From Haliotis rubra (Eukaryota), in contig NW_025766225.1 in the NCBI RefSeq assembly GCF_003918875.1, forward strand, positions 3,100,001 to 3,164,000: DNA of 64,000 bases, read 5' to 3'. The notes beneath the pieces are model-generated. The model worked only from the letters and a program-made list of their open reading frames with translations, was not told where the DNA came from and searched no databases. Shown here in pieces: positions 3,951 to 32,176 of this stretch. Both the position numbers and the translations under genes were made by a program. Positions within the stretch are counted from its first letter, which is position 1; each line of letters starts with the position of its first letter.

Positions 3951-3970
3951 GACACATGACAGTAACTGAC

Positions 3971-6339: not shown

Positions 6340-6547
6340 CTCAATCTGTTGGGAGGACTGAGATTAAGGTCGTCCTCCTGCACGACCTCTGGAATGTTCT
6401 CCACTTCAGGGCATCGGGACAGGCGGTGTTCATCTTCTATACTCTGGACAATGTCCCTCGACCCAAGAACTGGGGCTGAAAACTTTCGGTCCATGACCTT
6501 GAACCCTGATGGAGAGTTGGATGGGTGATAGAATCTTGGAGAATCAA
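6340..6547 (-). CDS. FARP1: FARP linker exon (DSPRFYHPSNSPSGFKVMDRKFSAP...PPNRL)
   Basis: ttccag|TT...AG|gtaagg; 208 bp, phase 1/2; open frame that joins the 5633 exon. Confidence 0.78.
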
Positions 6548-8548
6548 CTGGAAGAGAACAGCACACATTTAAGATTCAAAGTCAAAGACCTGCTTCATCA
6601 CAGTAGCCTCCCTTAGTCTTCCCATGCTAGTGGGGAGACAGATTGTGTCCTAGGTTGTGATGGCGCTGTGTGACTAGGAACGATCTAGGTCATTGTTTTA
6701 AGCAGCATGTTTCTGTGTCATGCATAAAAGATAAAATGTAAGAGTGAGTGAGTCAGTGATTTGAAACTTCTGATGAGGTGTAGACATTTCAATTCCAGAG
6801 TGAATGAAGGTCAAGGTCACTATGTTGATGCAGATATATTAGCAATTGGAGGAGGTTAATTGCCAAGCAACAGCAAAGCAGCCTCTGTTACCAATCATTG
6901 ACTCAGTAAAAAACAGAGTGAAATCATAGTTGTCCAACAACTACCTCATACCAGACACAGAGTGACCTTGACCTTCATCCACACTCTGTGGTGTGCCTGT
7001 ACCAGTTTGTGCCTTGACCATCCAGTGTTGACATTCTTCATACACTGGACCTCTTCGTCACGATTGTTCTGTACTGGAAGTCACATGACCATCTTTGTTG
7101 TCACTAACCGAGCACAAAATGTAGTTTGCTTTAGAGTGTTGTCTGATTGGATGGCTATTTGATGCCTTGTGTCATTTGAATCAGGCTCAAAATGGTATCA
7201 ATATGTACCAAAAATGGATAATGGAGCATGAAATTTTGTGTGAGAATTTCCTATTTGATAACCTTTATAATGACCCAGTCAGTTAAAGACTGGGTATATA
7301 GTTTGTATATTCCATGTCGACTTCAAACTGGAGACTTGATGCTTATCATATAAGGTGGGTGATGCAAGAAATGTGATACTAATGGCCCTACAACTGATTC
7401 ACATTTGTTCAATGCAACCTGATCTGCAGACGAAAACCATCAATCTAAATCTGGCTCTATCACTAGTGTGTTCAGGAGACATCTTCCATTCCCTTCCAGA
7501 GTCAGTAAACAGTAATTAGTTACTGACTTCCAACAGAATCTGGATCCCCATGTTTAGGTTACATTACACCAGATCAGAATCCTGAGTTTAACAATCCATT
7601 TTTGTAGGGAGTCTTAAGTGCAGATTGAATCATCTGACCGTTGTGATTGGATGATTTTGTGTAAGGTTTTTGTGCTTTTTAAATGGACATCTATCCAGCA
7701 ATATAAATTTGCCATGTTTCTTGATATTTAGTTGTGTCTTATTGAACATGAGGACTTTCGCTGAATGTGACCCAAGGTATTTTCAAGCGGTTGACACTTT
7801 ATGCTGAACTGGGGTTGGTCTGTTTAGCTTCCTGTACTAAGATGGATTGGCTGAGGTAGTAATTTCCTTATTTTCCTTTGCTGCTTTAAGGCTAGACTGT
7901 GCACACATGTAATGGCTGTTGATGGCTTTGTTGATTTGAAAAAACCCATTACTATAGAAGTAATAATTGATTTTGTGCAACCTTAAAGCAGCAGATGGAG
8001 ATGTTGATATATTCAGCTGTTGCGACTGTTTGAGACGTCTGCGCGTCTGGAACTAATATTCAACTTTTGCATACTATATAAAAGAAACTGTGCACTTTCT
8101 GTTGATTGTCTCATTAAAAGCCACAGTCCAATGATCAATATGATAATATATCCGTACTCTTGTGTTTCAAATTGTTCCTGTTCTGCTGTTCTCAGATCTC
8201 CATTGTTTCATTGGAAAATCAGGGCAGGCCCCTAGTTTGATGTGTTTGTTCAGAAGATGTTGGAAAATAAAAAATGCTGTATATGCAGTATAGCATGATG
8301 AAAATGTTCACAGTCTTGTTTCAAATACATAAAATAATTTGAAGGAGTGACAACAAATATATGCTGTTTCCCCCCAAAAACAAATATGGTGAAAAAACAC
8401 AAAAAAAACACACCCCAAACTTTAATGAATTTCTGAAGTACAAGAAGGTGGCTTCGTTCTTTCCTAAATGACTGTGCATTTGGATATGTCAAATCAAAAC
8501 TCATATCGGCTTACGACACTTCAAGCTATGTAGTAAACACTCAACTCT

Positions 8549-9675
8549 GTATGTCTTAATTCAGAATGAATACTATTTCTACGTATGTCTTAATTCAGAA
8601 TGAATACTATTTCTACTTATGTCTTAATTCAGAATGAATACTATTTCTACGTATGTCTTAATTCAGAATGAATGCTATATCTACGCACGTCTTAATTCAG
8701 AATTAATTCTATTTCTACGTACGTCTTAATTCAGAATGAATACTATTTCTACGCATGGCTTAATTAATAATAAATACTATTTCTATAATATGTCTTAATT
8801 CAGAATGAATGCTATTTCTACGTATGTCTTAATTCAGAATGAATAATATTTCTACGTATGGCTTAATTAAGAATGAATACTATTTCTACGTATGTCTTAA
8901 TTCAGAATGAATACTATTTCTACATATGTCTTAATTCAGAATGAATACTATTTCTACGTATGTCTTAATTCAGAATGAATGCTATATCTACGCCGACGTC
9001 TTAATTCAGAATTAATTCTATTTCTACGTACGTCTTAATTCAGAATGAATACTATTTCTACGTATGGCTTAATTCAGAATGAATGCTATTTCTACGTATG
9101 TCTTAATTCAGAATGAATACTATTTCTATGTATGGCTTAATTCAGAATGAAGGCTATTGCTATGTATGTCTTAATTCAGAATGAATACTATTTCTCCGTA
9201 TGGCTTAATTCAGAATGAATACTATTTCTATGTATGGCTTAATTCAGAATGAATGCTATTGCTACGTATGGCTTAATTCAGAATGAATACTATTTCTACT
9301 TATGTCTTAATTCAGAATGAATGCTATATCTACGCACGTCTTAATTCAGAATTAATACTATTTCTACGTACGTCTTAATTCAGAATGAATACTATTTCTA
9401 CGTATGTCTTAATTCAGAATGAATACTATTTCTACGCATGGCTTAATTAATAATAAATACTATTTCTATAATATGTCTTAATTCAGAATGAATGCTATTT
9501 CTACGTATGTCTTAATTCAGAATGAATAATATTTCTACGTATGGCTTAATTAAGAATGAATACTATTTCTACGTATGTCTTAATTCAGAATGAATACTAT
9601 TTCTACATATGGCTTAATTCAGAATGAATACTATTTCTACGTATGGCTTAATTCAGAATGAATACTATTTCTACA
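8549..9675. repeat. 34-bp minisatellite (gtatgtcttaattcagaatgaatactatttctac), ~33 copies
   Basis: Direct tandem repeat. Confidence 0.95.
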
Positions 9676-10562
9676 AACTACCGAGTGAAATAACATAATT
9701 TTTGTGTGTATTTTTTAATCACTAACACTGACAGCATAAAATAGATATCAGCAAAGTAATCTTAATTACATTTTCATTTCGCTATTGCTATTTGCTGGAT
9801 TTGAAAACTTAAGATACATTTAATGATTCATGTGTCGTACATCTCATGCCCTGTAATGATGGATCAAATCTTCTAATTCCCTCAGCTTGTGCTTGCAGTG
9901 CAAGATGTTGAATTCTGTCAGGCAAAAATATTTTTCTTTGGTTCCCAAGATTTTTGTTTATTAAAGTGATGCAATAAAGATATTTCTCAAAATTGAAAGT
10001 AATACTATCATCATTTAAAGAGCTATAATGTTATGGTAATTTTCAGACTTTCCAGGTTAACTGAAGCACTAGACAGTACAAGTCACAATGTCTCCATGCA
10101 ACGTACCCAGGTGTGCCAATAAATGTAAACTCAACAATTTGCAATGCAGACAATCTTCCTGATCAACTTCTGCTGTTCCCCTAACAACTTTTCCTAACCC
10201 TCTAAATGTCAGACTGCATAAAGAAAGAATAACTTCAGGTTGTTGCAATGTTTTCCTCTCTCCATGAAAACATTGTTTCTTATCAACATACACTGAAGGA
10301 AGCACTGCATATTATGGCTCCATATCAAACAAATCTACACAGGTTCAAACAAACAGTTCTGTACTTGTGGCTCCAAAACAAATATACATGGGATTGTGCT
10401 TCTTATAATGTCAAACTTAAAAACCAGCCCTTCCGTATTTCCTCTATAAGATGCCCAGGTACGTGACAATTTAACGAAAACCATCGATTAGGCCATGAAT
10501 ACATTGAAACCCCTGAACACCACCCACCCCCACCCCCCGATCCGCCCATGGAACACTTTTGT

Positions 10563-10680
10563 GGAAGCTGCGGTGGCTGAGTGGGTTAGACGGCTGAATT
10601 TGTGTGCTGGTGATTAGGTGCCTGACTCTGAGGGTGTGTATTTGAATCCCGGATGGGACTCAACTAAAAAAAAGTACTAG
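10563..10680 (+). mobile_element. tRNA-derived SINE head fragment
   Basis: A box TGGCTGAGTGG and degenerate B box TTTGAATCCC, then an A-run; no full cloverleaf. Confidence 0.55.
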
Positions 10681-11134
10681 ATTCTGTACATAAGTTACAT
10701 TGACGGCCTCCATTAGAGGCCAGCATGTCAAAAGGCCATTAATTACCAAAATATCAGTTTTTAAGATCTGAGAACAGAGGTTTGGCTTCTAATTTAAAGA
10801 CAGAACATGTGATAGCTTCTAACAGAGGAAATATGGTAATTCAGGTCCTCGGGTTATCGTCAACCGCACACGCTGCTGCAGCTGGTGAGATAATGTTTAT
10901 ACATGTGTTTCAGAAGGGAACACTACACGTGTGAATGCATACAGCCTACTGAGATTGTGTGCAATAAGATAATGTCAAACCTGCAAAGCCAAATATTTGA
11001 GATGTGTGTGTGGGTGTGTACATTCTGTAGCATCTTCTTCAATGAAACCTGTACAAGCTCAATGTCATAACTCAGGTCGCATGTATTCTTGAAGCTTGTG
11101 AAATATTTTGTACAGATCTGTTGAAGGGCCACTA

Positions 11135-11445
11135 TAGTAATAACTAATGTGGAAACGTTGTTAGGTGACTAGTATCAACTAATGTGGATCAGTTGTTGGG
11201 TGACTAGTATCAACTAATGTGGAAACTTGTTGGGTGACTAGTATCAACTAATGTGGAAAAGTTGTTAGGTGACTAGTATCAACTAATGTGGAAACGTTGT
11301 TGGGTGACTAGTATCAACTAATGTGGATCAGTTATTGGGTGACTAGTATCAACTAATGTGGATCAGTTGTTGGGTGACTAGTATCAACTAATGTGGATCA
11401 GTTGTTGGGTGACTAGTATCAACTAATGTGGATCAGTTGTAGATA
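11135..11445. repeat. 35-bp minisatellite (gactagtatcaactaatgtggatcagttgttgggt); degenerate copies to ~11800
   Basis: Direct tandem repeat. Confidence 0.9.
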
Positions 11446-14400
11446 ACTTGCTTAGCATTATGAGGATCAGCTGCAAGGTGACTGGCATGAACTAATGCAG
11501 ATCAGTGTTTAGGTAACTAGTATGAACTACTTTTATTTGTTTTGTGACCAGTGTAAACCACAGTGGATCAAAACTGTGTGAAAGTCTACACTTTTAGCTT
11601 GATAACGGTCTAAGAACCTACACCGACACATCGCTCAATGCAATAAACAGGACGTTGTTGTCCATTATGTAGTATGCTTCATTATTGACTCACAAACTTT
11701 TAGAATGCTGATAAAACAATCAATTTGGATCAGTTGTTAGGTGCCTAGTATCAACCAATGTTAATCAGTTATAGGTCACTAGTATAGACTAAGGTAGCTT
11801 TGTTTTAGTTACAAGAATTAACTAACATCTGCATGTCCTGAGTAAAACTCATTATTTAGTTAAAATTCCCATACCAATTCTCACATTTGTCTGACAGATG
11901 TGTACAAGGTTGTATAGAAATAATTTTAAAGATGTCTTTTTGGCAAGATGGGAAGTAATTATATTGCTATTTAATTAATAAACTAGTTGATTGAAGCTAC
12001 ATTCAGCATATTTTTGGAGTGTTAATTGTTGATAATGTTGATTGAATAATTACTTTTTCTTGACTCTATGATCATACTATGACAAAGAAAGTGACATAAA
12101 CTGGGGTCAAATGTCTCATTCAACATGTTTTCATTTTTACAATGTGAATTAATGTGTGTTTGAGTGTGGCTGTTTGTGTTAGTCCAGATTGCTGGTTCTA
12201 CTGTGCCGGACCACTGAAATACCAATCATTGTTGTCTCCCTTTAATGTCGTGTACCAGGCAGGATAACAAAAAGTACCATCTCTTCGAACATTCAGTATG
12301 ATGCAGCCTGGGATTGAACCAGCTTACCTTCTGTACCCAAGGCAGGTGCTCTATCCACACAACGACAGAGCATGAGTGAGTTAATATTGATCTATGTTGC
12401 TATTAGCAACGTTCCAATCAGGTCTCAGAAGAATGAACCAAGAGTAGGAGTGACCGAGTGACTGCACGTTTAGAATTTCCTTGAATACCTGGTACATTAA
12501 CTGAAAATAATGAGCACATCTAATCAATTGGGCCCTCCAGGGACTGTTTGAAGCATCTCTTCGCCAACTCCATGTCCTCTCTGCCCATCAGATCGGACCT
12601 GGAATGTTGCCAGCAGCCTGATTGACGTCAAGTTTTATTAAATGTCTTCTGCGCTGCTCTCTGCTCCAATTAATTTGTACGAATTTCTGTCCCCTCTGTC
12701 CTACATGTGACTTGTCAGGATTCTCCATTGGAGTCCCAGCATCAATCACGGCTGCAGGCTGCCGCCACACTTGCTGTGAGACTTGGCTGCTTCGTATGGT
12801 GGATGCAAGATGTCATATTCAATGCCTTAATCCATACTTTATTATACTGTGATTTTGGGCTCTTGAATATATTAACCATGACAATTTCTAATCACAATTG
12901 CAGTGGAGTAAAAAGTGATTTTGAATATTTGGAGAAAGCAGATGTGTGTTTAATGGTCATAAATTGACATATTGACCAGTGATGATAAAGTGACCTTGAA
13001 AGTATTTCTGACCTTGACAGTATTTCTGACGGATGCTGAAATAACTTTTCCACTCTGGGTATTGTAAAGAAACATATCACCTAACAGTGTTATTGATGAT
13101 AATTATTTCTGATAATTACGGTCCAAATAATACCATTACTACTTCTGCTGCTGCTGCAGACGAGACATAGGGGAGTTTTGGCACCTTCAAACATAAATTA
13201 CCAATTACAATGTGCAGGTGGAGGAAAATATTAATAATTGGAAACAAGTTCCCACTCTGCCAAAGATAATGTATTTCAAACATAACATGTAGAAAAAGAA
13301 TTTAACAGTAGAAACATTAAGAAAGTTATATAGTTGTGTAAAATTCTGAAGGTAAAGTTGAAATCTGGAAGAATATTTAATTGTTTCCACCTGGTCCAAC
13401 TCCTCACAAAAGAAATTTCTGAGACGGCAATATGTTTCTAAGGAGTATAAATTTGTGTATAAACGATATCTGAATATCTTTAATGTTAATACAAGTAACT
13501 TGCGTGTAAGTAAAGAACTGTTCAGACAGATCTGTAAACAAATATGGCTGCCAATCAGTTTGCAACATGTCATAAATTAGGGCAGATCAGTCAGGCTTTG
13601 TTTACCTACTAGGTTCAACAGTTGCTCAAAGAATGACATTATATAAGAGAGAGGTTATTACCCTCTTCATTGTCTCACCAAAGACTTGATTATTACGATT
13701 TTCATTTCTAATGTGACATTTATAATAGGAAAATACGCTCAGCTATTATTTTTTTATATATCTTTTCAGTAGGAATGTAAGATTAAAATGTATCTGCAAT
13801 AATTGGTACTTCAACTTCATGTATTCTTACTATTTATTCTTAAATGTTAATACCCCACAACTTCATTGTTTATGTACCATTTATACAGAATGTACAAATA
13901 AAGGTAGTCAAATGAAGGTTTTTTAAGGACACAAGTCTCCACATTGTCTGAGTCAAATGCGAAATCAAATAAGACCTAGATTTTTTCCTCCAGTAAATTG
14001 TGTTTAAAAAAGGCAACATCCTGTGTTATTGCCTTGCTTATATAATAATGTGTCTTGTGAACAGTTACCATGGATACGAATGGTGCAAGCTATAGCTATG
14101 AGAATGTAATCCACCACCCTATCAGGGCCCCTTGAGACTATTTGCTCAGCATGAGTCATGTTTTGACGAAGATTTTTCTCTGCTCTCAATGCCTCCCTGA
14201 CAGGTTTGAAATAAATACCCTGCCCATGTCAAAGGTCTGCTTGAGAAGAGATAAAGGTGTATTTCTAACTTTAATGTTCCTTGAGAATTCCAGCTTGACA
14301 TGAAATATAACCTATTCGGGGCCCCTTGAGACATGGAACTGTGTGAGGTGTGTTGATCTAATTTCCTAGTAGCCAGGATGTATCATTAAAAGTGAGCGTG

Positions 14401-17400
14401 TGAGTTTACCTTGTGTGAAATATGTGCTTTGGTTGAGGCCCAAGTATCTGTTGACATTCGGATGGATTACAGGCTGGTGTTGACAGATCAAGGAGCATAA
14501 TCATGTGGATCTGAGATTCAAACTCACAACCAGCAGATCCTTGTACCACCAAGGGGAGGTAATTGTGGCATGTTAGGCCCCTTGCCCTATGATACTTGTG
14601 ACAGATAGGAGATAATTTAACCTGTCAGTTGTTGCCATCACTGACCAGCAAACCTGCATTAGCAGATCCTGGCCTGACCAAAGGGAGGCAATTGTCACTG
14701 CCTGGGTGTGATTCCTCTGGAGGTTCATCATTACAACCCTCCAACATCCCCTACATATACACACAGATCATGCCCACAAGCCTGAAATCAATATCTCACA
14801 ATAGCAATGCTGTCCGATGATTTGCACAAAAAGGCAGAAGAAACAGAATATCAATACATATCAACTAAAAAGTACACACTTCATCAACGTATAATGCCCG
14901 CATGCAGTAATTTGTCAGCCAATCAAAATGAACCAGACTATTCAACAACCAATCATATTACAAATGAGAATGGTGGAAATAAAATAAAAATCCCAGACAA
15001 TTTTTGGTCGATAATTTGAGACAGGGAGAGAACCAACTAAATCACAACCAAGGTGGACATGCTCACAGTAATGCTTCTGTACTAGAAAATAAAGTTGTCA
15101 CATAATTAGCTGGTAGCTGAAGTCAGGGAGTAAAAAATAATCAATCATGGCGACACCATGCTTGTTAAAGCTGCAGTCTCCTTTCAATGTTTTGTTGAGC
15201 ATGCATTGAGCTCAGCACGCCATGTTTGCATTAAGCATAGAAAATGCTGATATTTCCCCGGGAGGAGTATGAATATATTTCCCTAGCGGGATTAAACCAG
15301 AATGGGTGGTAATATACACCATCTTCACATACAGAGGGACAAGCCATATGTTTGTTGATTCCTTGCCAAATTTCCGACAAAGATCTTACGAAATGAATTC
15401 CCTCCTTTCAAGCATAAGACAAACATTGTTCCTACACATTTACTATCAAATATAAAATGGTTGCCAAAAATAATTATTTACACAAAACATCTAAAGGCAC
15501 AACATTGATCACCCCAAGGTTTTGAGTACAATGAAAGAAGGAAATGCATTCTCCAGTCAGTGAAAGGGTTAACACTATGATGTTTATTGATAGAGACAGA
15601 AAACAAAATACTGATATATTTTCTATAAATTGATTTTCTTTATTGATTTCATTCTAAGCGCAACATTTAGCAATGTACAATTTCCTCGAAATCTAAGCCA
15701 CTTAATCCAGTAATTTTCATTATTATTCACAGAAGTGGGTTAAGAAAGGGTTAACGCTCATCTCTTTTTATCACGTCAGAATAAGCAGTTGCGTTAACCC
15801 TTCCTCAGTGAGAAATCCGAGAGAATTTGCAATAATGAAATGAACAGAAAATTGTCACATTTGCTCTTTCAAACTCATGTTGCCACAGCATCGATGGGAG
15901 ATACTATTTGTATGACGACACAAAACATGATGTACTTTCACAGAATTTGTATAAAATCTAAAAAAATGTAGTCCACATATAACTGGAATATTTCGCGCGC
16001 CAAAACATAACAAGGATTAAATCAAACATTAGAATGAAAACAGCATAACATAGGTATGTAGCATCTCAATAATATTAAAGTCACTTCTAACACACTGGAG
16101 AGAACAACATCAATTCATAACATTAGTTTCGAGGGAAACACAACGTGGACACAGATTCAGGTTTATCTCTATCTAAAAGTGCAAATTTCATGAAACAATC
16201 ACAATTTGTATTGATGCTGTAATCAAGGATACAGATTCTTCAAGTATTGCTTTGATTTTCAAAATAATTTTTTTCAATGTTTGTGCCTAAAACTCTAAAA
16301 AATAAACTTCTGAAATCAAAATGCGAATGACAATGGGGATCTCTGTACATATCCATATTATTGCAATTTTCAAATCTAACAAATAGTTTTTTAAACTATG
16401 AATAGAAAATAACATATAACAAACAACATTATGATATTTACTGTCGGCAGAAGAACAAACTGATACTGTAACTGGTACCTTGGATTAGCTGTTAAATATA
16501 CTATCTACATCTGGTGTATATAGCATCATATTCATCCAAAACAGAAAACAATATGCGAGCACTAAGGCTATGCCACTCATTATGAGAGTACCACCACCAG
16601 TAACCATGACAACCACATATACTGCTAAAGTATCTTGTATTCTTTTATTAGTCATACTATTACACTAACTGTTAAGCCACTGAACTGAATAAATTTATAA
16701 ATATTTATAGTTCTTCCATAGAACACAGTATTTTATCTTATAATAAATTTTTTTAGAGGTGTTTTGGTTGCTATCATAACTGAATTACCTACCTTGACTA
16801 AAAGTTGCTTGCCAAAATTGTAACTGTAAAGAGGCATGTTCCAAATTTACACAAAGTAGCAAGGATTGCACTTTCAGTAAATGTTTTATCATTGATATTC
16901 TTTCTGTTTATGATAATAAAGTTTAAGAAAATGTGTGGATTTTACTGAAGTTTGTAAATAACATCACTACTCCTTGTACTTTCTCTTTTTGTATTTATTC
17001 AGCCTCTTAGCACCTTCAAACATTTAACATTTCTTTCAACATTATTGAAAAGACAGTTCCTTATCGCAAGCATATTTAATCTAATAGAAATTGAAAAAAG
17101 AAAATTCTTTGGATTTTACCAAAAATTGATTAATATGAGATTAGTGGCAATGTATTTGAAATTTGCTTAAAAGGTTTAATTTTAGTAAATTACCAGAAAA
17201 TAATCTTCTGTGGACAGTAAATAACATACTCATCTCGACCATAACACAGTCACATACACGATGTAGTTTCATACATTATCTAAAGCTCAATGACAATGTA
17301 GCCTTTAAATAACTCCAAATAATAGCCACACTAACAATCAACCATTTGTAATTATCTCCCCTGCATACACAGCTCACGTGGTCGGCAATAAGTAGCGTGT

Positions 17401-20400
17401 TTGGTCTGAATAATATTTACCTCAGGGCTACTTCTGGAATGATATACTAAAAAAATAATCTTACATTGACTACAAACATATTTGCACATGGGAAGGAGAG
17501 ATTCGTAAAAATGAATAAACTCTGTTTAAAAAAGTCATGAATGCTTAAAACAAAAGATATTTTATAACACAATCATGACTCCAAAACTTTACCTTCTTTA
17601 TTGTAATCTGTTTAGTATGTTGGACATATTTACTCGAAGTTCTTTAAGAAAAAACAATTGTCTTTCAGACATGCGAGGATTAAGACTCAGTGGTGAGTGA
17701 GGAAAGGAATATAGTTTCTATGCGTACATGCTTAGTATGGCAGTAAAGATACATTGATAATATACCACGCTTTTGCTAGACCAATAACGTTTAGTGAGTG
17801 AGTAACTTGGGTTTAACGCCATCATGGCCTGTATTTTAGTTATATCACGGCATGGCAGATCAATATGGGAGATCAGGTCACTGACATCCTCTGCTTGGTA
17901 AAACCACATACACAAGTATGGCGAAAACAGACCAAGATCCTTATCAGGGCAAAACTGCTTCTTAAACCAAAGATCAGTGGTTCCTGGGACATCTAAGGGC
18001 CATAACTCTTAAACCACTATCAATGCCTGCCTTAAGACACAGGGAAACCTCCCTGGTGTGGTACTAATGATGATCATGAATTACATACTTAATATTACAT
18101 GTTATTGCTCTTTATACAATTATTACTTTAAATTCCTGCATAGCAAAATTTTTCGATTCTAGTCGCAAAGGGCAATGTTTTTTCAGGATATTAAGTGATT
18201 TTCAAACTGGAATTTATTGTTGCCTATGAAAGTAATGTATAATTAAAATATAACAGCTGAATAAATTAATCCGCATCATAATCAAACTTTGCACTACAGA
18301 AGAACGGAGGTGTTTCATGCGATCACTTAGTTGATATTCTCATTAAGCTTGATAAGCAACACAATGCTGGTATAGGCTGTATACATTGCACAAGCAGGAG
18401 AAGGCTGTCAAGAGAACCAAGCACCTAATCTAGACAGAACTAATCATATAGAAACCTCAGTAACCTTGAAGCTGTCTAATCATATCACACATACAATCTA
18501 ATCATATAAATATATTAAGGCCGATAACCAACCTCATCCTCTTTTTCCATTGCAAAATCTAAGCATATTTTATTGAAATACCTCAAAAGGCTCTTCAGAA
18601 AAACTACACTCATAATAACTAGTTATATAAGAAATACTATTTTCCTAGTCACTGTTAATCAACAATGTCTGTAGCTGAGAAAGATTGAGGAGAGAAAGGA
18701 CAGCTATATTGTCTGCAAACAAATATAATTCAAGCAAATCAAACAAATCCTCACGCTAGTGGGAAGTAAAATCTTCTCTTGACCATTCAAATGTTTCCTG
18801 TCCCATGAACATCCAATCAAATGGCGCCTTATCCTAAAACAAGGGCAGGCAACTCTCATAACATAATACAACAACAACAATTCTCACTAACCAGTCTGAA
18901 CACTGAAAGTTCTACTTGCTGTTCCAGAATGGACTCAACTGAACACTATTGGGAATACAACTACTTATAAATATGGACGCCATCCATGTTAAGTGAAAGA
19001 CAAAATTCGACCAATTCTACCCACAGGATTCAAAAGTTACTAAACAATAAAATTATGACTACAAAGGAATTGTCACAAAATAACTGCGTACAGGAGTCTG
19101 TTCAGCAAATTTCAAAATCAACAACCTAATATACATAAAACTAGTATGACTGAAATGTTCCGAGTTGCCAGGAACATAATATTTATACAAATCTGCATGT
19201 ATTTGGGATCTTGTAATCACTCTTCATCTAAAATTTTGATAATGAATAAATAAAAATATACCCCATCCCCAAATTTTCTAAAATCATCCAAAATAAGAAC
19301 TTTGAATGAATTAAATAAAATATTTTTAACTTGGGGTCATGTGATGAACTAGGTATGCGACATGCAAGCATCTTAGGTCATGGCAATTTTTACCGTATCA
19401 CAGCTCACTAAAATAATTATGTATACAATACACCATAAAACAAAATAATGAATCTCTACTTTGCCATGGAAATAAACCTTAAGAGTAAACAAGAGAAAGA
19501 AGCACTAGCAGCCATGCTTCATTAGAAATAATGCCAGATAAAAATATACAGAAAAACAACAAAAACAAAAGCTTAATGCCAACAAATACAAGAAAGCATG
19601 TGGTAATTTCATATTTTCTCCATTAAATTGTGGTTTGTAATATATCACTCATAGTTATTCAAAATATACATATATTGTTACAAGAATTTGTGTGTTACAT
19701 CCTTTATGAATGGCAGTCATTATGAAAGTTTATTATTTGAATTTAATGCGACATGAATTACAAATAAGTTATGAAAAAAGAAAAGAAAATGGAACTTTAT
19801 TTGACTAATCAAGTAATGATTATGAAAAGTAGCAGTTCTAGTTTATGAATACACAAGAAGTGGAAGTAGACTAAAGTCACACCCCTGATGCTCCCCAATA
19901 CTCCTGCATTGTGTGAGTAGGTGGGTTTAACACTGATTTTAACTGTATTCCAGTCATCTTAATGTGGAAACCCCAAGGGTTTCAGGTCTCAGATATTCAC
20001 CATTGGTGAAACCCATAAACAGGGAATGGTACAGACAAACCCAGAAACTTGGGCAATTGGATTTGAACCCAAACTCATATGGACAGTCAAGCACTGATCC
20101 AACAGCCTCAGAAAGTCTGTTCAATGTTAATTTATTGACTGGCTGCTAAACAATCTTTGTGACTATTTTGTAAAAGTCCTTCCGAAGTATGTGGTTCTTT
20201 TGTAAGAAGTAACATAACAAGATCCATTTTAGCCAGACATCAGATGAAAAGCCCTGCCCTCTCGACAATGTTTATGAAAACTGAATATTATATTTTACAT
20301 AATTACTCAATTAGACTCACTTATCCAGACTAAATAAAAGTGTGAGGCTACAGCTGTATTTGTATAGTCAGTTATACTAATAGAAATTCTGGATAAACAG

Positions 20401-22252
20401 GGTGGCACTGATACTCGTAGGGCCTGTTATCGATTATTATTTGTTCACCAAGAAACTTGAGAAAAAGTCAATGTAAGAGGTTGAACTTACAAAAAATCCA
20501 AGTTCCCAATAAGTACTTACTGCTAAAATGAATACAAAACAAGTTTGTACATGACAAGAAATTACTGAGTGGATTTTTGTCAGAATAGAGATGTTTACAG
20601 AATAATTTACCATTTCTTGTTTATCAAATCAAAATATTTTGCTGTACCTTATTTTATATAATAAAACATATGAATTTGCTTTAAGTCAACATAATTACAT
20701 TTTTCTTTCCATATTCTTTTCTTTTTGTTTGTCTTGAAAACCAAGTAAAAGGAATAAAGCCTAGGTGTTGAGTTTTGTCCCATTATTTACCGTAGGGTGT
20801 TAGTAAGTATATAGGTATTTGGCTGTAAGTATACAAGTAGGTATTTGGCTGTAAGTATACAAGTAGGTATTTGGCTGTAAGTATTATGTAGCAACATCTC
20901 TGCAATACTTAAAGGATAATACTGACATATGCAAAATATAAAGCTATATGCCCATGTAAGTATTGTAATTCCATGTCACCCAATGTTACTTCAAGCATTA
21001 AGCTGCTGTTTCCTGTATAATAATGGAGCACTGCAGTTAACATGTTTATCATCCCTAAGTCGGTTCCATATGAGATATTGCTTCAGTGAAACTGCATCTC
21101 CATGCTTTGCAGACCACTGTGATGTCATCAGTTTCTACTATGATGTCATCAGTTTCTATGACATCACAATCATAGGACATCACTAGCCCTGACAAAATGC
21201 TCTTGAAAGTCAATGTTAAAGTAACAGGGTCAAGATCACCTAAGCACTATTTTGTTGTAAGTCAATGTTAAAGCATAAGATTTACGACCATCTTAACACC
21301 GAACCATGTGATAGTGCTCAGATCAATTGGTGAAACTGGAAGATTTTTTCACTATACTCGGATATTTCTTTCATTTCTGATATGCGGTGAATTTAATGAC
21401 TGATGGTAGAGTTGCGAACAGTTCAATATGGAATGTTTTGTTATTTTGGCACAACTTAAGGTCTCAACGGAGAGTGATATGGAAGCACTTCCGGAGTGCG
21501 TAGACATTCTTGCAGCATGACGTTCTCATGGTTCAAACAGACCTACTTAACGTATTACTTTTGTAATTCCATCAGAACTGGTTTGTGTTTATTTCCAGGA
21601 ATCACTGGATAGGGATGATAAACAGGTCAAATATGGTGAATCCATCTTGATGTCAATAAACATCAACAAGAACTATTGATCATATATATTCAATATATCA
21701 AAAAATCTTTTTCTGCATTTGTTTGCATAAATCGAAAACATAAAATATATTGTCATAACTATAAAAATTCATTGCTTTAACTTTACACATTAGCTTTTCA
21801 CCCTTTCAACCTTATTATTTTCCATAACAAACTAAGATGTAACCAGCCCAACTTCTTCATCATGTCTATTAAAATAGTAATAGGATTGAAAAATGTAAGA
21901 CGAATTCCCTTGATTAGAACACAGAACAGAATACTGATACAATCCAATGCTAAATGGGAAATGTTGGTTACAAGAATAAATCAGACGGTTAGTATCAAAA
22001 GATAGAAGTTGACAAGGTACACACTGGACAGCAGAATTACTTTTTTACATTGTGATATTATTTCAAACATGAGGAAATTTCATAAATATAATCCTTCAAT
22101 GATGTTACATGAGTTATCTCCCTTTCTAATAAAGAAAGCATGACAGTTGTATTCAAAAAGTGGGATGAAGTTTTCAAAATATTGATTTTTTCACAGAAAT
22201 AAATCATCAACTTGTCATAAAAAAGATAATGTACAATTAATTAGAGCTGACT

Positions 22253-25200
22253 TCAGGTCTGACTCTCGTTTCCGAACTTTTCCTTAATGAACTCGGGCTT
22301 CGGCTTGGCAGCGACAGGGGGAGGGGGTGGCTTCTTCACAGGAGGTTTGTCCTCAAAATCACTCTCACTCTCGCTTGTCGTGTATTCAATGTCTGCGATG
22401 TCAGGATGTTCAAGATTGGCTAGCGGGTCGATGCTAAACCGTTTTTGATGATGCGGATGCATTTCAATTTCGGCAGACGATGATGAATTATCACTCGGTT
22501 CCTGAAGCTCCGGGGGAGGTGGAGGAAACTTAAAGTCATCATCCTTATCCCCAATAAAACTACCATCCATGGCATCGAGACGCTCAAGTGATTCTAGAGG
22601 TGAGACTTCTCTGGTATGTGTCGTCCCTTCACTTAGTTCACCGACCCCCGAGTCTATTGTCATATCCTTGCCTGACTCCGCGAGGCACTTGGTAGCTGCA
22701 TACTGCGCATAGATTTCCTTTGCCATGGTGTCATCCATATCGGACTCGGTGTCACTCTCACTTCCAGAGCTTCCGCTGTATGTCATGTCGCTCTCCGAGC
22801 CGTGGCCACACATGTTCTCTAGTGTATCCAAAATATCCCCAGAGTCCATTCCCTCCCCACAACTTCCTCCAAAACTTGAGTCATCACGATCATCCACGGG
22901 GCTCCTCATGACCATCATGCTCACATCACTATGGAAACTCTGACCAATGTCAACATCTTCATGGAAACTGACACGCTTTGGTTCTGGTTTCGGTTCTGGT
23001 GTTACGGCAGTGATCGCTTCACTCGTCATCTCTTCCTCCTCCTCCTCAACCCGGTTCAATGACCTCCGCTTCATTGAGTCAATCGGTTCCTTCTTCTCAC
23101 GAATGTATGACGGATCTAACTGACCATCGCTTCCAGGTTCCGGTCTAAACGTTGAGAAGGTCAAGGCTGCCGAATTGTCTTCCTTCTTTGAAGGCGGACT
23201 GTCCTCATCGCTATATATAAAAGCTGCTGCAGGAGATGGAAGGTCAAAGATTAATGGATTCCCAGAACTGTCCACCTTCAAGTTCTCCTTCTGTTCTTCC
23301 TGTGGATTTGGAGCGATCATATGCGTGGATTTTGATTCAGGTTTCACAGCAAACCAGGGATCCTTTTCTCCATCTAACACAAACTGTTGAGGATTTTCAG
23401 TCATGCAGGGACCCTCTGTTCCAAAAGCAGCAGTCCTTGGCACCCCGAATGTGTTGATATTAGAAGAGTCTTCAGAAGATGTGGGTGATGCATCTTTGAG
23501 AACAGGACTTGGAGGAGCTGGCAATGGTGACTTACTGTCAAGGTTTTGGCTGGCTGGGACTGAGATCTTGGAGTCTATTGCTATGTGAGCAGGTTCTTTT
23601 GTGGAAGATATAGCTGAAGACTCGGATGATGTGGACGACGATGATGCTCTCTTGGGGTCAATTGCTGCTTCTGGGCGCTTCTCTCTGGGCGGTTTAGCAG
23701 GTTTAACTGGCGGTCCTCCCTGCGTCTGCGGTTTCCGCACCTCAACAGACACATAAGCACCTGATTCTGAAACTGACTTATCACTGGCAGGTTTAGATGA
23801 CACAATACTTGTCATCTCACACTTTTCAACACTGTGTTTTCCATTTACAGCTTCTGATGCACTGGTTTTGCCATTTACAGTCTCAGGTACACTGCTTTCG
23901 ACCTTTACGGTTTCAGATACACTGCTTTTGCTATTCACAGTCTCAGCTACACTGGTTTTATCATTAACAGTTTCAGCTACACTGGTTTCGGGCACTGCCT
24001 TTGGCAAGGGAACAGGTGCCCCTTCACCGACAATGTCAGTTTTGCATTGGTCATCACTTGTTGGCACGGTTTCATCATCTTGCATTTTGTCTTCAAGCTG
24101 TTTGAGGATCTCCTTTTCGAATGAAGGACTTGTGGTGTCATCTACTGAGGAATAGCTGGTCCTAGAGGGAAGCTTGTGACAACTGACGAGCTCAAACCTC
24201 CGTAAAGTTGAAGGAGACCTTTCCAATGATGAGGATTTTCCTATAGTATTAGGGTGTTTGAGAGGAGGTGACAGTGGAATATCCACAGCCTTGAGTGGTT
24301 CGGAATTGGTCGGCGGCCGACCTGGACTTTTGTCCCTTGGTCGTGACTCTTTTGTTGAGGCACCTTCCGGACCTTTGTAGAATGCGGTCTCCTCCTTGTT
24401 CTCTGTCTCCCCCTTTAACCGTCGATGCAGGGTATATGGAATATCCACAATGAGATCGGTATCAGCGGAATACTTCCTCTTGTCAGTGAAACTGTCCACA
24501 TCCGGTTTCAGTGATGCACTTGCAATATTTTCACCAATAACATCCTTCCTCCCTTCCCCCTGAGGGGATTCTACCTCTCTACCATACACACTAGCAGTTA
24601 TACATGCACTTGGTGGGATCTCCCCATTCACCTTAGGATACAGGTTAGTAGAATTTAGTTTAGCTAAATCTGGCCTATCAGCTGCCTGACTCTCAGGAAG
24701 TCTGTCTATATGGTTAGTAGATTTCTCTGAAGCAGATACATTGTTTATTACATTTGTGTCATTAACACTCTTCAGCTTGGGACTATCTTCGGGAGAAAAC
24801 GTTACAGATTTACCCCCTGGTTCTCTCCCCTTCCCCACCCTCTCCTCCCCCTCGAGGTGATACGAATCCTGGGATGTGTTATCATCATTGTCATTTGCAT
24901 TTTGATTGGCTGATGGTTCATTTTGCATGGCAATATTATTAATAATTATATTTTGTTTCAACTTATCGAGATCTGAATCTGCACCTCTATCATCGGCTTC
25001 TGTCCTGGAATCAACACTGTCCTCCTTCCTCATCATTGCTGCTGCTGCTGCTGCTGCTGCCGTCGCCTCCCGGCGACGGGGATGTGTTCCAGTTTCGGGG
25101 AGCCCAGAGAGCGGCTCCCAGACATGGAACTGTCGCTGTGGACCTCAGCTGTCTCAACACGACTCATAGGGCTGACGTGGTTGTCCTGCGTGATGTCGAG

Positions 25201-25321
25201 AGTGTGGGAGCCGCTGGAAGCTGTGCTGTTGTGGAGGTCCGAGGAATTGTGGGTGTTAGCCTTCAGGGTAATCTTTGGTGTCACGCTGGTGCTCCGGCTT
25301 GAGATACGACCACTTGCCGAC
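22253..25321 (-). CDS. FARP1: Giant alternative terminal exon of the FARP locus: ~1020-aa Ser/Pro/acidic disordered tail ending in TGA (one apparent frameshift near 25080)
   Basis: Acceptor ttgcag|G at 25321 is in phase with the 32102 exon (SASGRISSRSTSVTPK...). Removing 2 nt at CCCC (~25078-25081) joins it to the 927-aa ORF 25036-22253. Confidence 0.85.
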
Positions 25322-25742
25322 CTGCAACATAGACAACTGGATTAAGTTTCCTATATAATACGACAAAAACCTCAACTAATCCCATGCCTCTTACGTTTGT
25401 AATTTTTAACAAATGTTTAATATTTTGATTAATTAGAATACATATAAGGCCAAACGTATTGTATGATGTTCCTTTACGATAATTAAATACTGAGTACCAT
25501 TCCTTCAATAACCTTTCTTAATTTTTTGCAGTGTGTGAACCAGACCTCAAGAATAGCTGGGTACTTGTGTAAAATATTCGATTAATTTTGAGTTGTTTGT
25601 ATGCAAATATGTATTGATGACAACATGTCACCTTCACGTTGGAAGAAAGCCCGAAGTGACGGAGGTCTCACAACTCTGGAGGAAAGGGGATAGTGCTGAC
25701 AAACCAGCAAATTATCATGCTGAATCTGGAACTCTCAATCAT

Positions 25743-30602: not shown

Positions 30603-30922
30603 ACGACTGACATGTCTGGGTTAAAGAATGGGAGATATAACTATCTTAGCGCTACGACTGACTTGTCTAGGTTAAAGAATGGGAAATATTACTATCTTAG
30701 CGCTATGACTGACATGTCTGGGTTAAAGAATGGAAGATATGACTATCATAGCGCTATGACTGACATGTCTTGGTTAACAAATGGTAGATATGACTATCGT
30801 ATCACTACGACTGATATGTCTGGGTTAAACAATGAGAGATATGACTATCTTAGCCCTACGACTGACATGTCTGGGTAAAAGAATAGGAGATATGACTATC
30901 TTAGCGCTATGTCTGACATGTC
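30603..30922. repeat. 51-bp minisatellite, ~6 copies
   Basis: acgactgacatgtctgggttaaagaatgggagatatgactatcttagcgct repeated. Confidence 0.9.
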
Positions 30923-31486
30923 TTTTTTAACGTATTGGGAATACAATGGTCTTAGGACTAATATCACTTTCTGAAATGGGGCCATCGGTTGAAAGCTTTC
31001 CAAAATCTTAATTAGTCAAAATGTGCTCGCCAAACTGGGAAACACATCTCTAAAATACTTTGAAGTCAAAAATAGAATTTGAAAGACTTATTGTCAGCTT
31101 TCGAAGATCAGCAATAACTACTCTACTCGACTTGGGACAGGGATATTTTCACCTTTCTATGACACACAACTGATTGTCAAGTGTATATTCAAATACAATG
31201 ACATATCTGATTATACCTATAGGTTGAGTAGCGTATTTTTTGCTTGGCAGTGTAAATAAGTACAAAATGTCAACAAGGATTGGTTTTATGTCCCCACCAC
31301 AAAACCAATGTTATTTCAAAAGCATGGATTAAAATGGAAACAAAGTTGCAAATTAGGAAAAAGGTTAATATCCTCATTGAACAGTTAGGCAACATTGGCT
31401 GATATTAGTTTTTTACTTAGAAAATGAATATATTTTTGACAATCACACAAACCATGGCCATTAGTCGTACAGGCATTTCACAGAAG

Positions 31487-32070
31487 CAGCCATTTGTGGA
31501 ATTCTTTAAAACTTGGGCCGCCATTTGTTGCAAGGTGTTTCCCCCTGGCAGGTCTTATTGGCAAGGTGTTTCATTGGGTAGCCATTGTTGGAATTCTTTA
31601 AAACTTGGGCCGCCATTTGTTGCAAGGTGTTTCCCCCTGGCAGGTCTTATTGGCAAGGTGTTTCATTGGGTAGCCATTTGTGGAATTCTTTAAAACTTGG
31701 GCCGCCATTTGTTGCAAGGTGTTTCCCCCTGGCAGGTCTTATTGGCAAGGTGTTTCATTGGGTAGCCATTTGTGGAATTCTTTAAAACTTGGGCCGCCAT
31801 TTGTTGCAAGGTGTTTCCCCCTGGCAGGTCTTATTGGCAAGGTGTTTCATTGGGTAGCCATTTGTGGTAAGTGTTTTATTGGGCAGCCATTTGTGGCAAG
31901 TGTTTTATTGGGTAGCCATTTGTGGCAATTTGTTTTACTGGGTAGCCATTTGTGGCAATTTGTTTTATTGGGCAGGCACTTGTTGCAAAGTGTTTTACTG
32001 GACAGCCATTTGTGGCAATTTGGTTTATTGGGCTGCTGTTATTGACAAGGTGTTTTATGGGGCAGCTGTT
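31487..32070. repeat. 95-bp x ~4 higher-order repeat continuing as ~30-bp monomers
   Basis: The 95-mer is built from three gccatttgt-type ~30-bp subunits, which continue as monomers up to the 32102 exon. Confidence 0.9.
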
Positions 32071-32101
32071 TGTCAACACAGGCATACAACACTGAACTCA
32101 C

Positions 32102-32176
32102 CTTTCAAACTGCTGCCGTTTATCGATGTTGCCACGTACAAACTCCATCAGCTGTTTCTGAGTTCGTCCACTGTAC
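32102..32176 (-). CDS. FARP1: FARP exon, FERM-adjacent (YSGRTQKQLMEFVRGNIDKRQQFER)
   Basis: atgcag|G...AG|gtgagt; 75 bp, phase 2/2. Confidence 0.93.

What the first reader, a model, noticed from the sequence alone, without database searches (positions are those of the whole stretch)
6340..32176. One locus, two proteins: FRMD7-like GEF-less isoform versus FERM-RhoGEF isoform
Seen: the FA exon (phase 2) splices in frame only to the giant exon at 25321, which ends in a stop at 22253. Intact linker and DH exons nevertheless lie ~16 kb further on, and the first (6547) needs a phase-1 donor. Two phase-1 donors lie inside the giant exon: GGG G|gtaaat (exon end 24814) and GAC A|gtaagt (exon end 23536). 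Known: vertebrate FARP1/2 are FERM-FA-DH-PH-PH, while the paralogue FRMD7 is FERM-FA plus a long unique tail. Inference: competition between internal 5' splice-site use and intronic polyadenylation switches between a scaffold-only and a GEF-type product. This could be the ancestral state later partitioned between FARP and FRMD7.
Basis: partly seen in the sequence, partly recalled or inferred. Interest (0 to 1): 0.7.

Follow-up and report, generated by a model that had tools for sequence, protein, structure and literature searches.

The report
Abalone FARP gene makes two proteins
One abalone gene of the FARP/Cdep family really does make two proteins, a Rho-activating enzyme and a GEF-less scaffold with a long disordered tail. 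It chooses between them by either splicing out of one large exon or reading on through it, and the same layout occurs in oysters, other snails and an ant. It already stands in RefSeq gene models but has not been discussed in print.

Summary

**What holds**
- RNA contigs from three runs join the FA exon (32176-32102, minus strand) to the big exon at 25321.
- They cover that exon through the stop at 22255-22253 and about 4 kb of 3'UTR.
- In one run they also join an internal donor to the linker exon at 6547.

**What is wrong**
- The donor used is AGA G|gtgcag, exon end 24985. It is not 24814 or 23536, which are two of 66 phase-1 GT sites in the ORF.
- As written in the window, the frame entering at 25321 stops at TGA 25035. 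Two extra letters (25073-25072) are absent from all four runs laid and from three other Haliotis species. Without them the frame joins the giant ORF.

**Conservation**
- RefSeq already lists both products as isoforms of one gene in Haliotis cracherodii, Gigantopelta and Saccostrea. An ant has a 3257-residue read-through Cdep form.
- The oyster locus has the same phases and the same AGA G|GTGC donor.
- The 910-residue tail is disordered and carries conserved short motifs. One of them, DIPYxLH(R/K)R, is also in the ant tail.

**Not shown**
- An exhaustive profile search found no similarity to the FRMD7 tail, so the FRMD7-origin idea remains untested.

Verdict: a new member of a known kind, of moderate interest.

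The parts
32807..48948 (-). FERM-domain coding exons. The approximate tblastn ranges are 48948-48838, 45767-45642, 45505-45335, about 44370-44245, 43985-43899 and 42988-42797. An optional 15-nt microexon lies at 39519-39505. The last FERM_C exon is 32967-32807. The first coding exon (about 31 residues) was not found in the window.
   Evidence: Pfam finds FERM_N and FERM_C on the exon translations. tblastn of the RefSeq isoforms P0010 and P0001 gives 71-100% identity. Sequence was read.
32102..32176 (-). FA (FERM-adjacent) exon of 75 nt. It enters in phase 2 and leaves in phase 2 (..TTT GAA AG|gtgagt).
   Evidence: Sequence. The YSGRTQKQ motif was located. Its last 30 letters appear as the loose end attached to 25323 in RNA runs X1, X3 and X4.
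24985..25321 (-). Shared first part of the composite exon. It is 337 letters in the window and 335 in the RNA contigs, and encodes about 112 residues common to both isoforms. It ends at the weak internal donor AGA G|gtgcag, phase 1.
   Evidence: In one search, contigs end at 25323 with the FA exon attached, and a loose end at 24985 is the start of exon 6547. RefSeq isoforms diverge after ..SRTEADDR. The donor matches the consensus at 5 of 9 positions.
25072..25073 (-). Two extra letters (CC on the minus strand) that break the reading frame in this assembly. As written, the frame stops at TGA 25035-25033.
   Evidence: Searches show the frame break. Searches show three other Haliotis species reading ..HIPVGEAT... 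One search shows a net loss of two letters in three RNA runs and one DNA run, though the tool masks 25020-25072 and so does not list the exact place.
22253..24984 (-). Tail-specific coding part of the composite exon. It encodes 910 residues (counted from 24985) and ends in the stop at 22255-22253. The tail is disordered and carries conserved short motifs.
   Evidence: ORF. RNA contigs cover it in X1, X3 and X4. It is 92-96% identical to Haliotis proteins and has conserved blocks shared with other gastropods and bivalves. The AlphaFold2 model has a mean pLDDT of 40.
18190..22252 (-). 3'UTR of the tail isoform, about 4 kb. AATAAA lies at 18218-18213 and the inferred poly(A) site is near 18.18-18.20 kb. 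The end coordinate is approximate.
   Evidence: RNA contigs continue below the stop. X3 record 8 runs 2320 letters beyond 20500 at the same depth as the coding part. A hexamer sits at the estimated contig end. The end is inferred and not seen in reads.
6548..24984 (-). The 18.4-kb intron removed in the GEF isoform. It contains the tail coding sequence, the 3'UTR and the presumed poly(A) site.
   Evidence: The 24985->6547 junction is seen in X3. P0010 maps to both sides of it.
6340..6547 (-). First GEF-isoform-specific (linker) exon of 208 nt. Its acceptor needs a phase-1 donor.
   Evidence: Sequence. P0010 residues 457-525 match at 91% identity. Its first 30 letters are the loose end at 24985.
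1927..5635 (-). Further linker and DH (RhoGEF) exons. The approximate ranges are 5635-5354, 4651-4553, 4104-3925, 3337-3245 and 2115-1927. The rest of the DH domain and both PH domains lie beyond the window's start.
   Evidence: tblastn of P0010 up to residue 784 of 1136. Pfam finds RhoGEF on 2133-1867.
23536..23536 (-). No evidence of use was found.
   Evidence: No joint or loose end appears here in three RNA runs, and contigs run through it. It is one of 66 phase-1 GT sites.
24814..24814 (-). No evidence of use was found.
   Evidence: No loose end appears here. RNA contigs have a hole at about 24799-24862 in a G-rich stretch, with ends that differ between runs. That does not fit one splice point and proves nothing either way.

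Best explanation
This is the abalone (Haliotis) orthologue of FARP1/2 and Cdep, and it makes two protein classes through a composite terminal exon.

After the FERM and FA exons, the transcript enters a large exon at 25321. Two outcomes follow.
1. **GEF isoform.** The weak internal 5' splice site at 24985 (AGA G|gtgcag) is used. An 18.4-kb intron is removed and the mRNA continues at 6547 into the linker, DH and PH exons. The product is a FERM-FA-RhoGEF-PH-PH protein of about 1136 residues.
2. **Tail isoform.** The site is not used. Translation runs on for 910 more codons to the stop at 22253, and the mRNA ends about 4 kb further on, probably at the AATAAA at 18218. The product is a GEF-less FERM-FA protein of about 1360 residues with an intrinsically disordered tail studded with conserved short motifs.

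Shown here:
- both junctions
- the read-through
- the conservation of the exon layout
- the conservation of the tail

Inferred only:
- the poly(A) site
- that the choice is a kinetic competition between splicing and cleavage/polyadenylation
- that the tail form acts as a membrane-anchored scaffold, possibly a competitor of the GEF form for FERM ligands

The two extra letters at 25073-25072 are most likely an assembly error or a private allele.
For: **RNA evidence**
- Runs X1, X3 and X4 behave as RNA. They have zero depth in the intron 25372-25700, while the DNA run X15 is continuous there.
- All three carry the FA-exon end attached at 25323.
- X3 carries the start of exon 6547 attached at 24985.
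- X3 record 14, X1 record 5 and X4 record 23 read through 24985.
- Contigs cover the exon to the stop and on to at least about 18.2 kb.

**RefSeq models of relatives**
- The RefSeq tail form (H. cracherodii) and GEF form (H. rufescens) are identical up to ..EADDR and then diverge into GADSDL.. or VDSPRF...
- Both map onto the window exon by exon.
- The isoform numbering shows one gene in H. cracherodii (X1-3 tail, X4 GEF), Gigantopelta LOC121371237 and Saccostrea LOC133174690.

**Genomic check in other species**
- In the oyster the FA exon ends in phase 2. The giant exon is 22334-25270. The GEF form leaves at AGA G|GTGCC and lands about 11.9 kb downstream.
- In the ant there is one 2908-codon open frame, 16549-25272. 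The GEF form leaves it at 16905, and a 3257-residue RefSeq isoform reads it to the end.

**The tail is a real, conserved protein region**
- Blocks are shared by 15 mollusc tails.
- An exhaustive search found 51 relatives, including one in Lingula.
- The motif DIPYxLH(R/K)R is in every mollusc tail that carries this block (absent from the bivalve tails P0027, P0028) and in the ant tail.
- By my estimate, 910 codons staying open by chance has a probability of about 1e-19.

**3' end**
- AATAAA at 18218 lies about 33 nt before the estimated end of the RNA contig.
Against: - As written, the window's frame from 25321 stops at 25035. In this assembly neither long product is encoded without dropping two letters.
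- The runs laid differ from the window at about 1.7% of letters, and all four share most of the listed differences. They are therefore not the assembled individual, and may be another population or a close species.
- The 24985->6547 junction was seen in the contigs of only one of three RNA runs.
- Only contigs were available, not raw reads. Transcript ends, strand and isoform ratio are therefore not measured.
- The poly(A) site is inferred from a contig end whose sequence I could not read.
- No protein-level evidence exists for either isoform.
Confidence: 0.85

Rival explanations
1. Two adjacent genes, or a gene fission: a FERM-FA-tail gene ending at 22253 and a separate DH-PH gene starting near 6.5 kb, with no shared mRNA.
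For: H. asinina RefSeq annotates the tail ORF as a gene of its own ('uro-adherence factor A-like', P0002), and Biomphalaria does much the same. No promoter test was done.
Against: An RNA contig in X3 joins 24985 to the first letters of exon 6547. RefSeq GEF isoforms in three Haliotis species, Gigantopelta, Babylonia and Saccostrea carry the same N-terminal 450 or so residues as the tail forms. Exon 6547 begins in mid-codon and has no start of its own.
Confidence: 0.03
2. The read-through RNA is unproductive intron retention or nascent transcript, and the giant ORF is not a functional protein.
For: Only contigs were seen. No poly(A) reads, no strand information and no peptide evidence are available.
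Against: The neighbouring intron upstream has zero depth in all three RNA runs, while the read-through part has depth similar to the exons. The frame stays open for 910 codons. The tail is conserved from abalone to oyster and Lingula, with invariant motifs, one of which is shared with an ant. The stop position is kept in H. cracherodii.
Confidence: 0.05
3. In this particular genome the gene is genuinely broken: a 2-nt insertion truncates both isoforms after a poly-Q run at 25035, giving a null or pseudogene allele.
For: The window's letters give a stop at 25035. No run in the index matches the window closely enough to be its source; the best run holds 0.71 of the sampled words. The assembly therefore could not be checked against its own reads.
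Against: Four independent data sets and three other species lack the two letters. Everything downstream stays open and conserved at 92-96% protein identity. The site is a G/C run next to a repeat, where consensus errors are common.
Confidence: 0.12
4. The reader's donors at 24814 and/or 23536 are also used as minor alternatives, giving GEF isoforms with longer inserts.
For: Both are phase 1 and resemble the consensus more than the real donor does, at 6/9 and 7/9 against 5/9. Contigs drop rare variants, and the RNA contigs have a hole at about 24799-24862.
Against: No joint or loose end appears at either place in three runs. None of the nine RefSeq GEF isoforms of three Haliotis species carries such an insert.
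Confidence: 0.07

Closest known systems
Vertebrate FARP1 / FARP2 (FERM, ARHGEF and pleckstrin domain proteins; originally CDEP)
   Same: The domain order is FERM-FA-linker-DH-PH-PH. A basic KRK(R/K) patch is present in the F3 lobe: the window reads [10 protein letters not shown], and PMC6041286 describes KRKR. RefSeq names the abalone GEF isoforms 'FARP2-like'.
   Different: The abalone gene also makes an abundant GEF-less form by reading through the exon after the FA domain. I found no description of such a form for FARP1/2 in the library searched. The vertebrate loci could not be examined here.
Vertebrate FRMD7
   Same: FRMD7 has a FERM plus FA domain followed by a long tail with no known domain and no GEF. 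Its closest relatives are FARP1/2, with about 60% FERM identity (PMC6041286, PMC3163398). Its last exon (exon 12, from c.1051) starts shortly after the FA domain, according to the mutation table of PMC3163398. That resembles the position of the abalone composite exon.
   Different: FRMD7 is a separate gene, not an isoform. Its tail is about 360 residues, against 910 here. The mollusc tail profile found no FRMD7-type protein in 1.84 billion representatives. Intron phases could not be compared.
Insect Cdep (Linepithema humile RefSeq isoforms)
   Same: The same gene family and the same trick. An exon after the FA domain has an internal donor used by the GEF form, and it is also an open frame of 2908 codons read to the end by a 3257-residue isoform. 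The tail carries the DIPYTLHKRH motif.
   Different: One extra intron separates the post-FA segment from the giant exon, which therefore starts in phase 1. Apart from the motif, the tail shows no similarity detectable by BLAST or HMMER to the mollusc tail.
Composite terminal exon / intronic polyadenylation switches (textbook case: immunoglobulin mu secreted versus membrane forms)
   Same: A weak 5' splice site lies inside an exon that can also serve as the last exon, with a poly(A) signal in the downstream intron. Two proteins share an N-terminus and differ at the C-terminus.
   Different: The regulation here is unknown. The alternative C-terminus is very large (910 residues), and it has been conserved at least across molluscs.

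Membership tests
FARP / Cdep (FERM-RhoGEF) | N-terminal three-lobed FERM domain | tested here: met
   Pfam finds FERM_N and FERM_C on window exons. The window maps to P0010 and P0001, which carry FERM_N, FERM_M and FERM_C.
FARP / Cdep (FERM-RhoGEF) | FA (FERM-adjacent) region directly after the FERM domain | tested here: met
   Exon 32176-32102 encodes YSGRTQKQLMEFVRGNIDKRQQFE. Pfam finds FA in the near-identical P0001.
FARP / Cdep (FERM-RhoGEF) | DH (RhoGEF) domain in the same mRNA as the FERM domain | tested here: met
   Pfam finds RhoGEF on 2133-1867. The 24985->6547 junction is in an RNA contig. P0010 maps across it.
FARP / Cdep (FERM-RhoGEF) | Two PH domains after the DH domain | not testable with these tools
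   These exons lie beyond the window's start, since P0010 maps only to residue 784 of 1136. The relatives' GEF isoforms do carry PH domains.
FARP / Cdep (FERM-RhoGEF) | Guanine-nucleotide exchange activity on Rac or another Rho-family GTPase | not testable with these tools
   This needs a biochemical assay.
FRMD7 | FERM-FA followed by a long non-GEF tail ending in a stop | tested here: met
   The tail isoform shows this, but as an isoform and not as a separate gene.
FRMD7 | A stand-alone gene without DH-PH exons | tested here: not met
   DH exons follow in the same locus and are spliced to the same FERM exons.
FRMD7 | Tail sequence related to the FRMD7 C-terminal region | tested here: inconclusive
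   The profile of 15 mollusc tails gave 51 hits. Only two carry a FERM domain (an oyster and Lingula), and none has the FRMD7 length and layout. No FRMD7 sequence could be fetched for a direct comparison.
Composite terminal exon / intronic polyadenylation isoform pair | An internal 5' splice site that is both used and read through in mature RNA | tested here: met
   In X3 there is a loose end at 24985 leading to exon 6547, and record 14 spans 24851-25014.
Composite terminal exon / intronic polyadenylation isoform pair | A functional poly(A) site inside the intron of the longer gene form | tested here: inconclusive
   The RNA contig ends at about 18.18 kb, next to AATAAA at 18218. No raw reads or poly(A) tails were seen.

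The most novel reading that the evidence does not exclude
The GEF-less FERM-FA-tail product, marked by the DIPYxLH(R/K)R motif, is an ancient second output of the FARP/Cdep locus. It would date at least to the protostome ancestor and possibly to the bilaterian one. Vertebrate FRMD7 would then be the copy that, after genome duplication, kept only this read-through isoform, while FARP1/2 kept the spliced GEF isoform. That is isoform partitioning between duplicates.
Probability: 0.3. Interest if true: 0.65.

Novelty: new member of a known kind. Interest (0 to 1): 0.45.

Why it matters
FARP proteins link plexin and cell-adhesion receptors to Rac and Rho signalling. FRMD7, their GEF-less relative, causes X-linked infantile nystagmus, and the function of its tail is unknown.

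If invertebrate FARP/Cdep genes routinely make a GEF-less form with a conserved tail motif, three things follow:
- Loss-of-function work on Cdep or FARP in invertebrates has to separate the two products.
- The tail motifs become testable handles for finding partners of the scaffold form. These include DIPYxLH(R/K)R and an FPPPPP stretch that resembles an Ena/VASP EVH1 ligand; that resemblance is my inference.
- The origin of FRMD7 becomes a concrete question of exon structure.

There is also a practical point for annotation. Several genomes file the giant exon as a separate 'uro-adherence factor A-like' or 'dentin sialophosphoprotein-like' gene, which is a mis-annotation.

Tried and rejected
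I looked for use of 24814 and 23536 and found no joint or loose end.
- **Frame rescue in the window.** I looked for an alternative acceptor or tiny intron that would fix the frame, and saw no plausible site in 25144-25036. The two-letter explanation fits all relatives.
- **Known domains in the tail.** Pfam found nothing on the tail or on the linker exons. PDB sequences gave nothing at E<=1.
- **Fold of the tail.** The AlphaFold2 model is disordered, so I ran no fold search.
- **Ant and spider tails.** BLAST and HMM searches of the mollusc tail against them found no hit. Only the short motif is shared.
- **Word search with the tail alignment.** It returned molluscs and a few unnamed proteins only.
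- **Naming the distant giant-ORF hits.** Most have no name. Two loci show an FA exon or a shared post-FA segment just upstream of the giant ORF, but their organism is unknown. One look-up returned no DNA.
- **Literature.** I found nothing on GEF-less FARP/Cdep isoforms, FRMD7 as an ohnologue, or intronic polyadenylation in FARP1.
- **Lottia and Elysia gene models.** They splice one tail block between the FA and DH domains. The abalone RNA shows no such joint, so I take them for ab initio artefacts.
- **FRMD7 from memory.** I did not use an FRMD7 sequence recalled from memory, because that would be unreliable.

Full report
**What is in the sequence**

The gene lies on the minus strand. Open stretches and Pfam scans place FERM_N at about 48.9 kb, FERM_C at 42.9 and 32.9 kb, and a RhoGEF piece at 2133-1867.

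The exact exon boundaries, read from the sequence, are:
- The last FERM_C exon is 32967-32807 and ends in phase 2.
- The FA exon is 32176-32102: G TAC AGT GGA .. TTT GAA AG|gtgagt. It also ends in phase 2.
- The big exon starts at 25321 behind ..tgttgcag.
- A 927-codon ORF inside it, from the ATG at 25036, ends at the stop 22255-22253.
- The linker exon is 6547-6340. It starts with two letters that complete a codon, so it needs a phase-1 donor.

**Two errors in the observation**

First, the frame. With the phase-2 entry at 25321, the window reads RSASGRISS...IPVAGRRRQQQQQQQQ and stops at TGA 25035-25033, just after a (CAG)8 run at 25060-25037. The giant ORF is in the frame offset by two letters. 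tblastn of the relatives' proteins also splits the exon into two frames, 25323-25072 and 25036 onward.

Three other Haliotis species read KLEHIPVGEAT(A)nMMRKED at this place. The window has gtcgCCgggagg where gtcggggagg would encode that, so two letters at 25073-25072 are extra.

In the reads tool, all three RNA runs and the DNA run have two letters fewer than the window between 24985 and 25323. The tool masks 25020-25072, so the place itself is not listed.

Second, the donors. The giant ORF contains 66 GT sites in phase 1.

**RNA evidence (runs chosen)**

X1, X3 and X4 are recorded only as 'RNA?', but they behave as RNA. They have no depth in the intron 25372-25700, where the DNA run X15 is continuous. 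Their contigs also stop at 25323 with a loose end that is the reverse complement of the last 30 letters of the FA exon. The FA->25321 junction is therefore real in three runs.

In X3 a loose end at 24985 is the reverse complement of TTGATTCTCCAAGATTCTATCACCCATCCA, the first letters of exon 6547. The internal donor is thus AGA G|gtgcag, with exon end 24985. It is phase 1 in the giant-ORF frame and matches the consensus at only 5 of 9 positions.

The same runs also read through this donor (X3 record 14 at 24851-25014, X1 record 5, X4 record 23). They cover the exon to the stop and beyond. X3 record 8 runs 2320 letters past 20500, to about 18.18 kb, at the same depth as the coding part.

An AATAAA at 18218-18213 lies about 33 nt before that estimated end. 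I take it as the likely poly(A) signal. This is an inference, because I could not read the contig's end.

Contig word depth is higher on the shared part (10-18) than on the tail part (5-12). That fits two mRNAs of roughly similar abundance, but the tool warns that this is a poor measure.

**Independent gene models**

The giant ORF identifies the organism as an abalone:
- It is 96% identical to an H. asinina protein named 'uro-adherence factor A-like'.
- It is 92% identical to an H. cracherodii 'uncharacterized protein isoform X2' of 1360 residues that carries FERM_N, FERM_M, FERM_C and FA but no RhoGEF.

H. rufescens 'FARP2-like isoform X2' (1136 residues, FERM-FA-RhoGEF-PH) is identical to the H. 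cracherodii protein up to ..SRTEADDR. The two then diverge: GADSDLDKL.. in the tail form and VDSPRF.. in the GEF form. This is exactly what the 24985 donor predicts.

Accession and isoform numbering show a single gene in each case:

| Species / gene | Tail isoforms | GEF isoforms |
|---|---|---|
| H. cracherodii | X1-X3 | X4 |
| Gigantopelta aegis LOC121371237 | X1-X2 | X3-X4 |
| Saccostrea echinata LOC133174690 | X1 | X2 |

Babylonia shows the same kind of pair.

**Conservation of the layout**

I fetched the oyster locus and mapped both isoforms:
- The FA exon ends ..CAA AG|gtacat, phase 2.
- The giant exon starts A TCT GTT AGT GGT AGG.., the same RS.SGRISS segment as in abalone.
- It runs for 2.9 kb to a stop.
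- The GEF form leaves it 106 codons in, at AGA G|GTGCC, phase 1, and lands about 11.9 kb downstream.

The codon and the first four intron letters of the weak donor are the same as in abalone.

In the ant Linepithema humile:
- The post-FA segment also starts in phase 2, but an extra intron follows it.
- The next exon lies in one open frame of 2908 codons (16549-25272).
- The GEF form leaves that exon at AACAG|GTCGTA (16905) and lands at 37980.
- A 3257-residue RefSeq isoform reads the frame to its end.

**The tail**

An alignment of 15 mollusc tails (A1) shows invariant short blocks inside otherwise variable sequence:
- RKLSA..DLIEDIPY.LHRR
- HKLP.R.SYSSVDDTTSPSFEK
- DLPSPAAA..YSD.DSPPSK..LTFSTFRPDP
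- EPKRVSFHED
- DSGDILETLENL
- FPPPPP
- YTTSESESDF

Further tests gave:
- Pfam and PDB sequences return nothing.
- The AlphaFold2 model has a mean pLDDT of 40, with four short helices. It is a disordered tail with linear motifs.
- An exhaustive HMMER search of 1.84 billion representatives with this profile found 51 proteins at E<=0.001.
- Most hits are giant ORFs called alone on unnamed animal contigs. Two carry FERM sequence, an oyster protein and Lingula anatina XP_013417928.1.
- Two of the unnamed loci have an FA exon, or the shared post-FA segment, just upstream of the giant ORF.
- None of the hits looks like FRMD7.
- The ant tail is not found by BLAST or HMM. It does contain DIPYTLHKRH, matching the D-I-P-Y-x-L-H-(R/K)-R motif present in the gastropod tails and about twenty distant hits, though not in the two bivalve tails P0027 and P0028. 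By my rough estimate a chance match in 1800 residues has a probability of about 1e-4.

**How it most likely works**

This is a composite terminal exon. Use of a weak, conserved 5' splice site gives the GEF protein. Failure to use it exposes 910 further codons and a poly(A) site inside the 18.4-kb intron, giving a GEF-less FERM-FA scaffold.

The two junctions, the read-through and the conservation are shown here. Three steps are inferred:
- the competition with cleavage and polyadenylation;
- the poly(A) site itself;
- the role of the tail form, which I take to be a membrane-anchored scaffold that may recruit partners through its motifs or compete with the GEF form for FERM ligands.

By analogy only, FRMD7 still acts on Rac1 signalling, through RhoGDI (abstract of PMC3742540).

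**Comparison with what is known**

The GEF form is an ordinary FARP/Cdep orthologue. The tail form resembles FRMD7 in architecture only.

According to PMC3163398:
- FRMD7's closest relatives are FARP1/2.
- Its C-terminal region has no known homologue.
- Its mutation table places exon 12 from c.1051, shortly after the FA domain (residues 288-336).

That is compatible with descent from a read-through exon, but I could not compare intron phases or sequences.

From memory, and not tested here, FARP1, FARP2 and FRMD7 lie in chromosome regions that share other duplicated gene families. That would fit an origin by genome duplication.

I found no paper in the held library describing GEF-less FARP/Cdep isoforms or discussing the origin of FRMD7.

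**Verdict**

- Observation: partly confirmed.
- Interpretation: partly supported. It is right in substance and wrong in the donors. It overlooks the frame break, and it remains unproven for FRMD7.
- The isoform pair already stands in RefSeq predictions for several species, so the abalone case is a new member of a known kind.
- The points that seem new are its conservation from molluscs to an ant, the conserved weak donor, and the DIPY motif.

Exons were searched one by one by reference, and the relatives' stored proteins were used instead. No letters were changed at the frame break.

Noticed in passing
window 25072-25073 (minus strand CC): Two letters absent from three other Haliotis species and from four runs break the frame of an otherwise conserved exon. 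The likely cause is an assembly consensus error beside a (CAG)8 run, or else a private null allele.
   Followed up: partly
window 39505-39519 (minus strand): A 15-nt microexon, GTGAATGGAGCGTGG (VNGAW), has a clean acceptor (..tatccag) and donor (gtatgt). It is present in the H. rufescens GEF isoform P0010 and absent from the H. cracherodii tail isoform P0001. It inserts five residues in the F3 lobe of the FERM domain.
   Followed up: partly
tails of P0001 (res 632), P0123 (res 1286) and about 30 other proteins; window about 24445-24420: The short motif D-I-P-Y-x-L-H-(R/K)-R-(H/L) is invariant in gastropod tails. It is also present in many unnamed giant ORFs and in the ant Cdep tail. It matches no known domain or solved structure.
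   Followed up: partly
window about 22480-22465 (..DFKFPPPPPELQEP..): An FPPPPP stretch flanked by acidic residues is conserved in the mollusc tails. It looks like a class I EVH1 (Ena/VASP) ligand. That is my inference and was not tested.
   Followed up: no
L002 16549-25272 (Linepithema humile): One open frame of 2908 codons sits inside the Cdep gene. The current RefSeq release splits it into a 1818-residue isoform and a separate 'uro-adherence factor A-like' gene, whereas an older model read it whole (3257 residues).
   Followed up: partly
P0002 (H. asinina), P0006 (Biomphalaria), P0170 (Lingula): The giant tail exon is annotated as a gene of its own under misleading names: 'uro-adherence factor A-like', 'FARP1, partial' and 'dentin sialophosphoprotein-like'.
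   Followed up: partly
P0047 (Lottia gigantea) residues 305-395; P0108 (Elysia chlorotica) residues 332-411: GEF-type gene models contain one conserved tail block (DLPSPAAA..LTFSTFRPDP) spliced between the FA and DH domains. The abalone RNA shows no such joint. These are probably ab initio artefacts, though a third isoform is not excluded.
   Followed up: partly
window 26744-27340 (+ strand): A 198-codon ORF with a Tc1/mariner-type transposase C-terminal part (..DNDPKH..NPIENVW..) lies in the intron upstream of the big exon.
   Followed up: no
window 27980-28977, 34046-36149, 40599-42473, 50416-52021, 53037-54967, 55656-56428, 56866-59520: The introns of this gene hold at least seven large tandem arrays, with periods of 30, 52, 67, 84, 45, 21 and 129 nt and up to about 43 copies at 65-96% matches (the 129-nt array is the loosest).
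   Followed up: no
window 24799-24862: All three RNA runs have a hole in contig cover over a G-rich stretch (ggggaggagagggtggggaagggg), while the DNA run is continuous. The contig ends differ between runs, so this looks like an assembly or filter effect and not a splice event.
   Followed up: no
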